NCBI RefSeq assembly: GCF_022045235.1
Contig: NW_027266273.1
Location: 1,302,001 to 1,366,000, forward strand
From: Haliotis cracherodii
Lineage: Eukaryota
Direction of reading: 5' to 3'
DNA length: 64,000 nt
Position 1 is the stretch's first letter, and each line of letters starts with the position of its first letter. The notes under the pieces are model-generated. The model saw only the letters and a program-made list of their open reading frames with translations, made no database searches and was not told the origin of the DNA. This document shows, in pieces, positions 2,570 through 3,240 of the stretch. Made by a program: the position numbers and the translations under genes.

Positions 2570-3240
2570 ACTGTTCCGATGGTGTGACGCATTACGGACA
2601 GAGTGGCGAATACATTATCCAACCTCATCTGTCCCCCCGCCCATTTATTGTCTACTGTGAGATGGCCTTAGGTGGACGAACCGCCATTCTGAAACAGACC
2701 ATTGGAAATGAAAACTTCAATAGACCATGGGATGACTACAAGAATGGATTTGGAAACATTTCAGGAGACCATTGGCTGGGCAATGACTACATCCACTACA
2801 TCAGCTACAGCAGAAAACACTCGCTCTTGGTACAGGTTGAAACGGGTAGCAGCTATCACCAGTATTACATGCAGGACTTTGGAGTAAATGATGAAGCAAG
2901 TAAGTATAAGCTGACGTTTGGCCATCATTTCACCAGTGACAAGTTTCCTGAATCCCTCGAAGACTGCCTTGGACCGTTATACGATTCAACATTCAGCACC
3001 CCAGACCAGGACAATGACAACAGTGCCCGGAACTGTGCTCAGGACTTTCAGTCAGGCTGGTGGTTCAAGGACTGCTCCACTTGCAATCCCACAGGCGTGT
3101 ATGAGGCATCCCCAGCCGGTGGACAGGCTGGCGGCGCTGACAGTGACCTACACTGGACTCCTGGGCAGGGATTGGGAACCCGGTCCCCGAGGATGATGCT
3201 CTTGTACCTGGTCTACAACAACCCAGACACATGGGGATAA
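2570..3240 (+). CDS. FReD gene 1, exon 3: fibrinogen C-terminal-related domain
   Basis: Acceptor ttgcAG at 2568-2569 gives DCSD in frame. Motifs VYCEM, FNRPWDDYKNGFG, HWLGND, FSTPDQDND, GWWF. Spliced CDS is 1071 nt = 356 aa plus stop. Confidence 0.95.

What the first reader, a model, noticed from the sequence alone, without database searches (positions are those of the whole stretch)
2959..3240. Sharp homogenisation tract over the ligand-binding half of two otherwise diverged FReD paralogs
Seen: 2959-3240 (+) and 59054-59335 (-) are both 282 nt and differ at ~13 positions by manual count (~95% identity, synonymous sites included). The preceding ~130 codons of the same exon differ at ~47 residues (~65% identity) and at many third positions. 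Similarity stops at the stop codon (GACAGTC vs GGCTACG). Established: the FSTxDxDND...GWW...C region forms the Ca2+/ligand-binding P subdomain of ficolins and tachylectin-5. Inference: recent gene conversion between inverted paralogs 56 kb apart keeps or swaps the recognition surface while the scaffold diverges. This could be a mosaic-generating mechanism for an invertebrate immune lectin family.
Basis: partly seen in the sequence, partly recalled or inferred. Interest (0 to 1): 0.8.

Follow-up and report, generated by a model that had tools for sequence, protein, structure and literature searches.

The report
Gene conversion keeps abalone lectin domain alike
In black abalone, neighbouring copies of a secreted fibrinogen-type lectin gene repeatedly overwrite one another in the part that codes for the presumed binding pocket, while the rest of each gene has long diverged: a clear new example of a well-known process.

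Summary
A (2959-3240, +) and B (59054-59335, -) differ at 13 of 282 bases. The preceding 387 aligned bases of the same exon differ at 123. Synonymous divergence is about 2 (saturated) upstream and 0.12 in the tract. The change point is at the stated boundary (0 of 2000 shuffles).

The genome is Haliotis cracherodii. The genes are PAN/Apple-EGF-fibrinogen-domain proteins.

- **Not an artefact:** contigs from another individual bridge both tract ends.
- **Not constraint alone:** Californian A and B are closer to each other in the tract than to their orthologs in H. rubra and H. asinina (ratio 0.64, against 1.69 upstream). Sixteen other family members show no general synonymous conservation there.
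- **Other species:** in three other abalone species the assembly graph forks at the same boundary, and the paralogs merge into one contig.

- A third copy, A', 14 kb upstream of A, and a pseudogene take part, so there were several events, old and recent.
- The sharp stop at the stop codon is the edge of a high-copy repeat in B.

The process homogenises the tract. Nothing shows that it generates mosaic diversity. It is a new member of a known kind. The scan reported domain-limited conversion in this genome before (FoxAB cluster).

The parts
351..652 (+). Gene A, exon 1: signal peptide and PAN/Apple domain. The 3' end of the exon is approximate.
   Evidence: P0048 (XP_071103417.1) residues 1-98 map at 100% to 351-644. 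Pfam PF00024 is on record for the protein cluster. The stretch is 95% identical to exon 1 of A'.
1299..1405 (+). Gene A, EGF-like exon. It ends in phase 1.
   Evidence: Translation and splice sites were read. It is 94% nt identical to the A' exon and 51% aa identical to the B exon.
2570..3240 (+). Gene A, last exon: the whole fibrinogen-related domain plus the stop codon.
   Evidence: Pfam PF00147, E 2.4e-39. Open frame read. P0048 residues 130-354 map here.
2959..3240 (+). Homogenised tract in A. The core is 2959-3165 and the tail, still typical of gene type, is 3166-3240.
   Evidence: 13 of 282 bases differ from B. The core differs at 6 of 207 and the tail at 7 of 75. A and B are identical over 3004-3115.
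59054..59335 (-). Homogenised tract in B. The core is 59129-59335 and the tail is 59054-59128.
   Evidence: Contigs of X1 bridge both ends. In X12, X13 and X15 the contigs break with a 30-nt overlap at 59306-59335, and the core contig has 1.8-3.6 times the depth of the 5' contig.
59054..59725 (-). Gene B, last exon: the fibrinogen-related domain plus the stop codon.
   Evidence: Pfam PF00147, E 1.1e-38. P0054 (XP_071104213.1) residues 131-356 map here.
62634..62738 (-). Gene B, EGF-like exon. Exon 1 of B lies outside the window, at window-equivalent 71793 to about 71493.
   Evidence: tblastn mapping.
55310..55656 (-). Pseudogene fragment of the same small family (psi), with stop codons and deletions.
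   Evidence: Four stops inside the match. It is 72-73% identical to both A and B upstream of the boundary and 86% in the tract. One stretch of about 56 nt is almost identical.
58640..59052 (.). High-copy dispersed repeat that starts 2 nt after B's stop codon. It sets the 3' limit of A/B similarity.
   Evidence: At least 1930 candidate copies in the genome, at 91-94% identity, end at 59047-59052. Read depth is 5,000-26,000 over 58597-59058 in all four runs.

Best explanation
A cluster on one chromosome of Haliotis cracherodii holds three intact genes and a pseudogene fragment. The order is A' (+), A (+) 14 kb further on, psi (-), and B (-) 56 kb from A. The genes encode secreted proteins with a PAN/Apple, an EGF and a fibrinogen-related domain.

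A-type and B-type genes separated long before the abalone species compared here. PAN, EGF and the first 128 codons of the fibrinogen-related exon show this.

The last 282 nt of that exon code for the Ca2+-site and presumed ligand-pocket part. They have been overwritten repeatedly between the copies by non-reciprocal ectopic recombination (interlocus gene conversion without crossing-over).

The 5' limit sits at a hypervariable loop. Upstream of it the copies are only 68% identical, too diverged to pair. The 3' limit in B is a repeat element next to the stop codon.

Between A and A', conversion covers the whole exon plus 82 nt of 3' flank, while their introns are unalignable.

**Shown:** the divergence step, the discordant trees, a paralog distance below the ortholog distance, and the same fork in other species.

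**Inferred:** the repair mechanism, the role of divergence in fixing the boundary, and that the copies therefore share one binding specificity on different scaffolds.
For: - **Step in divergence, synonymous sites included.** dS is about 2.0 upstream and 0.12 in the tract. The change point has chi-square 73, with 0 of 2000 permutations reaching it.
- **No general synonymous conservation of the 3' half.** Sixteen other paralogs have similar pS in both halves, for example 0.50 and 0.59, 0.55 and 0.53, 0.67 and 0.80.
- **Discordant trees.** PAN+EGF+5' half gives A and B types each as one group at 100/100. Forcing the Californian A and B together is rejected at p-AU 1e-51. The tract groups the Californian A and B at 93/97, and the types are monophyletic in only 5% of bootstrap trees.
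- **Rate-free test.** The ratio of paralog distance to ortholog distance is 1.69 upstream and 0.64 in the tract. Only 63 of 5000 bootstraps reach 1 or more.
- **States shared by both types within a species.** GGADSD in cracherodii and rufescens, GAADSN in rubra, GAGDST in asinina.
- **A DNA site of the same kind.** At 59267 (A coordinate 3027) A, A' and B of cracherodii share one base. The single merged contig of each of three other species carries another.
- **Same boundary in other species.** In those three species the contigs fork with a k-1 overlap exactly at 59306-59335. The tract core has 1.8-3.6 times the depth of the 5' contig.
- **Patchy three-way pattern in the tract**:
  - 2959-3003: A' equals B at 3 sites where A differs.
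  - 3004-3115: A and B are identical.
  - 3116-3240: A is close to A', and B has 9 private sites.
- **A and A'.** They are 98% identical in the exon, and their introns cannot be aligned.
- **Ortholog divergence.** Cracherodii B against the other species is about 3-4% in the 5' half and intron and 1.4% in the core. The tract is therefore not a mutational cold spot large enough to explain 32% against 3% between paralogs.
Against: - The AU test on the 94-residue tract does not reject type monophyly (p 0.126).
- The tract is also strongly conserved as protein in all species, with 41 invariant residues in a row. Constraint therefore adds to the similarity and lowers the power of every test.
Cross-species DNA evidence rests on Logan contigs, on depth ratios and on a table that shows only part of the differences.
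- No conversion event was seen segregating in a population.
Confidence: 0.85

Rival explanations
1. Constraint only. A and B never exchanged sequence. The 3' part is similar because selection on the protein, and perhaps on the RNA or codon usage, holds it.
For: The tract is the most conserved part of the protein in all four species and both gene types. Ortholog divergence in the core (3 of 207) is lower than in the 5' half (about 13 of 390).
Against: - pS falls from 0.70 to 0.11.
- The paralog distance in the tract is below the ortholog distance, which no rate reduction can produce (ratio 0.64).
- 8 of the 15 Nei-Gojobori differences in the tract (13 sites differ) are non-synonymous.
- A pseudogene shares the tract.
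- Other family members show no synonymous conservation there.
Confidence: 0.04
2. One single event. A partial duplication or one conversion in the ancestor of the Californian abalones replaced B's 3' part, and ordinary divergence followed.
For: The Californian A and B form one group in the tract tree at 93/97. The tail 3166-3240 keeps type-specific states shared by cracherodii B and rufescens B (K, Q, T).
Against: - In H. rubra and H. asinina the A-B tract distance is only about 1.15 times the ortholog distance, against about 2.2 upstream. I computed this by hand from the matrix.
- Species-specific states are shared by both types in rubra and in asinina.
- A' equals B in one patch and A equals B in the next.
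- Cracherodii B carries A-like N358 and D360, where B of the three other species has D358 and H360.
- A and A' have converted over the whole exon. They show 1 aa difference in each half of the fibrinogen-related domain, against 12 in PAN+EGF. Their PAN+EGF distance is no smaller than that between cracherodii A and rufescens A.
Confidence: 0.1
3. Assembly or polishing artefact. Reads of A were mis-placed on B, or the reverse.
For: None found. The risk exists in principle for near-identical paralogs.
Against: - Independent contigs of another individual bridge both tract ends with 0-1 differences.
- Ten runs from four studies hold half or more of the sampled words of B's exon stretch.
- RefSeq proteins of three other species from separate assemblies show the same mosaic.
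Confidence: 0.01

Closest known systems
Domain-limited concerted evolution of paired receptors (CEACAM1-like N-domain exons in the CEA family; PMC7042247)
   Same: Gene conversion keeps the ligand-binding part of neighbouring paralogs alike while the rest of each gene differs. Some members escape.
   Different: There the unit is a whole exon of mammalian Ig-type receptors. Here the boundary lies inside one exon of a mollusc fibrinogen-related domain, and the partner domains are PAN/Apple and EGF. I took only that paper's abstract from the search result.
Biomphalaria glabrata FREPs, said to diversify by gene conversion and point mutation (review PMC12074976)
   Same: Mollusc lectin-like proteins with a fibrinogen-related domain, in gene clusters, with gene conversion invoked.
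   Different: BgFREPs carry IgSF domains, and conversion there is described as a source of diversity. Here there is no IgSF domain, the change is in the germline, and the effect is homogenisation of the C-terminal part of the fibrinogen-related domain.
Classical coding-limited concerted evolution of tandem duplicates (for example primate gamma-globin and Drosophila amylase genes; from my own knowledge, not checked here)
   Same: High identity confined to coding sequence, diverged introns and flanks, and tract ends where homology is interrupted.
   Different: Here three levels are nested in one cluster. A and A' convert over the whole exon, A/A' and B over the 3' 282 nt only, and a pseudogene takes part.
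FoxAB cluster of the same genome (scan note s1-829601)
   Same: Same genome. The domain-coding part is homogenised among neighbouring paralogs and the ends stay diverged.
   Different: A different gene family (forkhead) and ten copies. I did not re-test it.

Membership tests
Fibrinogen-related domain proteins (Pfam PF00147 Fibrinogen_C) | Significant match to the family profile over most of the domain | tested here: met
   A scores E 2.4e-39 and B scores E 1.1e-38, against a curated cut-off of 22 bits. The best solved relatives are FGL1, ficolin-1/2 and angiopoietin-1.
Fibrinogen-related domain proteins (Pfam PF00147 Fibrinogen_C) | Ca2+-site motif (D-x-D-x-D after FST) and the cysteine pair of the C-terminal subdomain | tested here: met
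   FSTPDQDNDNSARNCAQDFQSGWWFKDC aligns with [28 protein letters not shown] of FGL1. The histidine after the second cysteine of FGL1 aligns with serine here.
Fibrinogen-related domain proteins (Pfam PF00147 Fibrinogen_C) | Sugar or acetyl-group binding (lectin activity) | not testable with these tools
   No binding data exist. Function is inferred from homology only.
Interlocus gene conversion / concerted evolution | Abrupt change of paralog divergence that includes synonymous sites | tested here: met
   dS is about 2.0 upstream and 0.12 in the tract. The change point is reached by 0 of 2000 permutations.
Interlocus gene conversion / concerted evolution | Segments of one gene give conflicting trees | tested here: met
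   The 5' part groups by type at 100/100. The tract groups the Californian A with B at 93/97. The AU test on the tract alone is not significant (p 0.126).
Interlocus gene conversion / concerted evolution | Paralogs within a lineage closer than orthologs between lineages | tested here: met
   The ratio is 0.64 in the tract and 1.69 upstream, with 63 of 5000 bootstraps at 1 or more. States at three residues and one DNA site are species-specific and shared by both types.
Interlocus gene conversion / concerted evolution | Conversion alleles seen segregating, or events seen directly | not tested
   This needs paralog-resolved population data or long reads. Only one read-laying run was available.
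Biomphalaria-type FREPs (IgSF + fibrinogen-related domain, somatic diversification) | One or two N-terminal IgSF domains | tested here: not met
   The N-terminal domains are PAN/Apple (PF00024) and EGF-like.
Biomphalaria-type FREPs (IgSF + fibrinogen-related domain, somatic diversification) | Somatic sequence variation within an individual | not tested
   Only contigs were laid. They drop rare variants.

The most novel reading that the evidence does not exclude
The tract is a shared 'binding module' with a recombination boundary that has stayed in place since before the split of the Californian abalones, and perhaps of the genus. Any change in the recognition surface is then copied to every scaffold (different PAN, EGF and N-terminal fibrinogen subdomains). 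The cluster would evolve as one specificity presented in several contexts. Milder drops of divergence at almost the same exon position occur in two other fibrinogen-domain clusters (C5 and C8). They would make this a family-wide rule in abalone.
Probability: 0.3. Interest if true: 0.55.

Novelty: new member of a known kind. Interest (0 to 1): 0.4.

Why it matters
- **Warning for gene trees.** Whole-domain trees of mollusc fibrinogen-related proteins will misdate duplications. Different parts of one exon here have histories that differ more than ten-fold in age.
- **A testable prediction.** A, A' and B should bind the same ligand, although they differ by 35% in the rest of the domain and by about 42% in PAN and EGF.
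- **A tractable system.** It allows study of what fixes a conversion boundary: a hypervariable loop on one side and a transposon edge on the other. Resequencing data already exist for the species, which is endangered.
- **Limit.** It does not show a new mechanism of immune diversity.

Tried and rejected
I could not fetch the ortholog DNA of H. rufescens, H. rubra and H. asinina. Codon-level cross-species trees, per-segment dS between orthologs and GENECONV/RDP runs were therefore not done.
- **No spliced model was joined.** Only single exons of the window were searched. For whole proteins I used the public models that the search tools returned (P0001-P0055).
- **A's 3' UTR after the repeat in B.** I looked for it by local alignment and found nothing (best score 22).
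- **Other copies in the 104 kb around the cluster.** There are none besides A', A, psi and B.
- **GC-biased conversion.** GC3 in the tract is 0.64-0.65, against 0.52-0.54 upstream and 0.35-0.57 in other paralogs. This is suggestive only, because amino-acid composition differs.
- **RNA evidence.** Two runs guessed to be RNA hold 0.64 and 0.42 of the words of B's exon stretch.
- **Structure prediction.** Alignment to FGL1 was enough to place the tract.
- **Masked stretches.** The N runs at 33925-34052, 44916-45049 and 62403-62600 were left as they are.

Full report
**1. The observation**

Window 2572-3240 (+) and 59054-59725 (-) are each one open exon that codes for a complete fibrinogen-related domain and ends at TAA. 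Pfam gives PF00147 at E 2.4e-39 and 1.1e-38.

In a codon alignment with a single one-codon gap:
- The last 94 codons (A 2959-3240, B 59335-59054) differ at 13 of 282 bases.
- The first 128 aligned codons differ at 123 of 387 bases and at 45 residues.
- By Nei-Gojobori, pS is 0.70 (dS about 2, saturated) and dN is 0.26 upstream.
- In the tract, pS is 0.11, dS is 0.12 and dN is 0.037.
The chi-square is 73, and 0 of 2000 permutations reach it.

**2. Whose genome and what genes**

The word search returned RefSeq proteins of Haliotis cracherodii on a contig of 29,332,880 bases, the length of the window's contig C10.
- Gene A is XP_071103417.1 (P0048). Its exons are at 351-652 (signal peptide and PAN/Apple), 1299-1405 (EGF-like) and 2570-3240.
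- Gene B is XP_071104213.1 (P0054). Its exons are at 62738-62634 and 59725-59054. Its first exon lies beyond the window's end.

Searches used single exons, and whole proteins were the public models returned by the tools.

**3.

A six-frame search of the whole genome found 117 matches to the domain. Only four belong to this subfamily:
- A.
- B.
- A', 14 kb upstream of A on the same strand and outside the window. It is 99% identical to A as protein.
- A pseudogene fragment, psi, at 55310-55656 (-), with four stops.

The next relatives are only about 43% identical.

A and A' are 97.9% identical over 762 nt. The match starts 9 nt before the exon and ends 82 nt after the stop. Their EGF exons are 94% identical. 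The intron between the two exons is 1155 nt in A and 344 nt in A', and the two cannot be aligned.

In the protein models:
- A and A' differ at 12 of 132 residues in PAN+EGF. That is as many as A of cracherodii against A of rufescens (10-11).
- They differ at only 1 of 128 and 1 of 94 residues in the two halves of the fibrinogen-related domain. The rufescens ortholog differs at 7-8 and 4-5.

So A and A' are an old pair whose last exon has been homogenised in black abalone.

**4. Fine structure of the tract**

With three copies aligned:
- In 2959-3003, A' and B share the state at three sites where A differs.
- In 3004-3115, A and B are identical, while A' has three private changes.
- In 3116-3240, A and A' differ once, and B has nine private changes.

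Psi is 72-73% identical to both A and B upstream of the boundary and 86% inside the tract. About 56 nt in a row are almost identical.

This patchwork fits several exchanges with different partners. It does not fit one event.

**5. Artefact?**

Ten runs from four studies hold at least half of the sampled words of B's exon stretch.

In run X1, another individual:
- A 623-nt contig (59280-59902, one difference) bridges the 5' boundary.
- A 296-nt contig (58994-59289, no difference) bridges the stop codon.

Separate assemblies of H. rufescens, H. rubra and H. asinina give proteins with the same mosaic. The artefact reading is out.

**6. Constraint or conversion?**

The tract is very conserved as protein. 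Forty-one residues in a row are invariant in both gene types of all four species. Constraint is therefore real. It cannot be the whole story, for six reasons.

- (a) Synonymous divergence falls more than ten-fold.
- (b) Among 16 other paralogs, pS is the same in both halves. Examples are 0.50 and 0.59, 0.55 and 0.53, 0.67 and 0.80.
- (c) The trees conflict.
  - PAN+EGF+5' half puts all A types and all B types apart at 100/100. It rejects a Californian A+B group at p-AU 1e-51.
  - The tract groups the Californian A and B at 93/97. The types are monophyletic in 5% of bootstrap trees.
  - The AU test on only 94 columns does not reach significance (p 0.126).
- (d) A rate-free comparison gives a ratio of 1.69 upstream and 0.64 in the tract. 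The ratio is the Californian A-to-B distance divided by the distance to same-type orthologs in rubra and asinina. Only 63 of 5000 bootstraps reach 1 or more. A duplication older than the species cannot give a ratio below 1 without exchange.
- (e) Residues at alignment columns 329, 330 and 333 read GGADSD in both types of cracherodii and rufescens, GAADSN in both types of rubra, and GAGDST in both types of asinina.
- (f) The DNA of three further abalone species (runs X12, X13, X15) was laid on B.
  - The contigs break with a 30-nt (k-1) overlap exactly at 59306-59335.
  - Only one contig covers the core (59129/59133-59335). Its depth is 38.1 against 10.6, 77.3 against 38, and 21 against 11.7 for the 5' contig. 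The paralogs are therefore merged there.
  - That merged contig carries a base at 59267 that differs from the one shared by A, A' and B of black abalone.
  - Ortholog differences are about 13 in 390 nt in the 5' half, about 10 plus indels in 315 nt of intron, and 3 in 207 nt in the core. The core is somewhat slower, but nowhere near enough to explain 32% against 3% between paralogs.

In rubra and asinina, the A-B tract distance is about 1.15 times the ortholog distance, against about 2.2 upstream. I worked this out by hand from the matrix. It points to earlier exchange as well.

**7. The two boundaries**

*5' boundary.* It lies at a loop that is variable and gapped in the family alignment. It reads TSDKFPES in A and THNQAAVM in B. 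Upstream identity is 68%. I infer that heteroduplex cannot extend into it.

A dispersed repeat with at least 1930 candidate copies in the genome (91-94% identical) occupies 58640-59052 and starts two bases after B's TAA. Read depth there is 5,000-26,000 in all runs. No A-like 3' UTR follows the repeat.

*The last 75 nt.* They keep type-specific states that B of cracherodii shares with B of rufescens (K, Q, T). Black-abalone B has the A-like N358 and D360, where B of the three other species has D358 and H360. This suggests a short A-to-B patch.

**8. What the tract codes for**

Alignment to human FGL1 (7TZ2) and ficolins places the tract 13 residues before the FST-D-x-D-x-D Ca2+ loop. It then runs through the cysteine pair to the C-terminus. 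From established knowledge of fibrinogen gamma, ficolins and tachylectin-5A, this is the P subdomain with the ligand pocket. I did not test that here. The histidine after the second cysteine of FGL1 aligns with serine here, so the ligand may differ from that of acetyl-binding ficolins.

**9. Mechanism**

The best reading is recurrent non-crossover ectopic recombination among copies 14-70 kb apart. Between A and B, which are inverted, a crossover would invert 56 kb, so only conversions persist.

The runs of identity in the tract (112 nt between A and B) keep it a substrate. The diverged upstream part has escaped.

The effect is homogenising: one binding part on different scaffolds. Nothing shows that it creates new mosaics for immune recognition, and no immune role was tested.

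GC3 is 0.64-0.65 in the tract. It is 0.52-0.54 upstream and 0.35-0.57 in other paralogs. This is a weak hint of GC-biased conversion.

**10. Comparison and novelty**

Domain-limited concerted evolution is well known. The CEA family is one case (PMC7042247, abstract seen). Gene conversion is also the textbook claim for Biomphalaria FREPs (PMC12074976). I found no paper on abalone fibrinogen-related genes and gene conversion.

The scan has already reported the same kind of process in this genome for a FoxAB cluster (s1-829601). I did not re-test that.

Two other fibrinogen-domain clusters show a milder drop of divergence at nearly the same exon position:
- C5, L010 and L013: change point at nt 402, divergence 0.152 falling to 0.055, p 0.01.
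- C8, L007 and L008: change point at nt 417, divergence 0.185 falling to 0.077, p 0.006.

Verdict: a real, well-supported and nicely layered case of a known process.

**11. Limits**
- Only one read-laying run was allowed, and its tables are truncated.
- Species behind the codes organism B to D are not named.
- Depth ratios come from contigs.

Noticed in passing
G000:C10:1290232-1290897 (L002), 14 kb upstream of A, outside the window: Third intact copy, A' (XP_071104210.1). It is 98% identical to A in the last exon plus 82 nt of 3' flank and 94-95% identical in the PAN and EGF exons. The introns are unalignable. Its first intron is about 10 kb, against 0.65 kb in A.
   Followed up: yes
window 58640-59052: High-copy dispersed repeat with at least 1930 candidate copies and inverted ends of about 80 nt. 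It abuts B's stop codon. Whether it is present at this site in other abalone species is unknown.
   Followed up: partly
L010/L012/L013 (C5:28.44-28.52 Mb) and L007/L008 (C8:27.12-27.17 Mb): Other fibrinogen-domain clusters show a milder drop of divergence at nearly the same position in the exon (nt 402 and 417). Synonymous pS is 0.24 against 0.07, and 0.25 against 0.15. This may be the same process elsewhere in the family.
   Followed up: partly
window 31862-32254 (+): Open frame with a C1q domain (PF00386, E 2.9e-14) between the two lectin genes. An exon upstream at 28781-29173 may belong to it.
   Followed up: no
window 1422-1689, 22729-22986, 28092-28355, 51193-51431, 55687-55868, 57532-57743, 60045-60317, 62983-63218: At least eight copies of one SINE-like repeat (79-90% identical). 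One sits in the intron of A and two in the intron of B. It is the element of scan note s1-841743.
   Followed up: no
window 14500-21550, 16266-17226, 46809-47249, 49022-49660, 61165-61602: Open frames that look like reverse transcriptase and Tc1/mariner-type transposase fill much of the 56 kb between A and B. This rests on reading the translations and was not scanned.
   Followed up: no
P0047 (H. rufescens XP_048238516.1, 308 aa): A second A-type model of H. rufescens loses the alignment from shortly before the tract onward, as after a frameshift. It could be a pseudogene or a model error.
   Followed up: no
window 33925-34052, 44916-45049, 62403-62600: Runs of N. The last lies in B's intron between the EGF exon and the last exon.
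   Followed up: no
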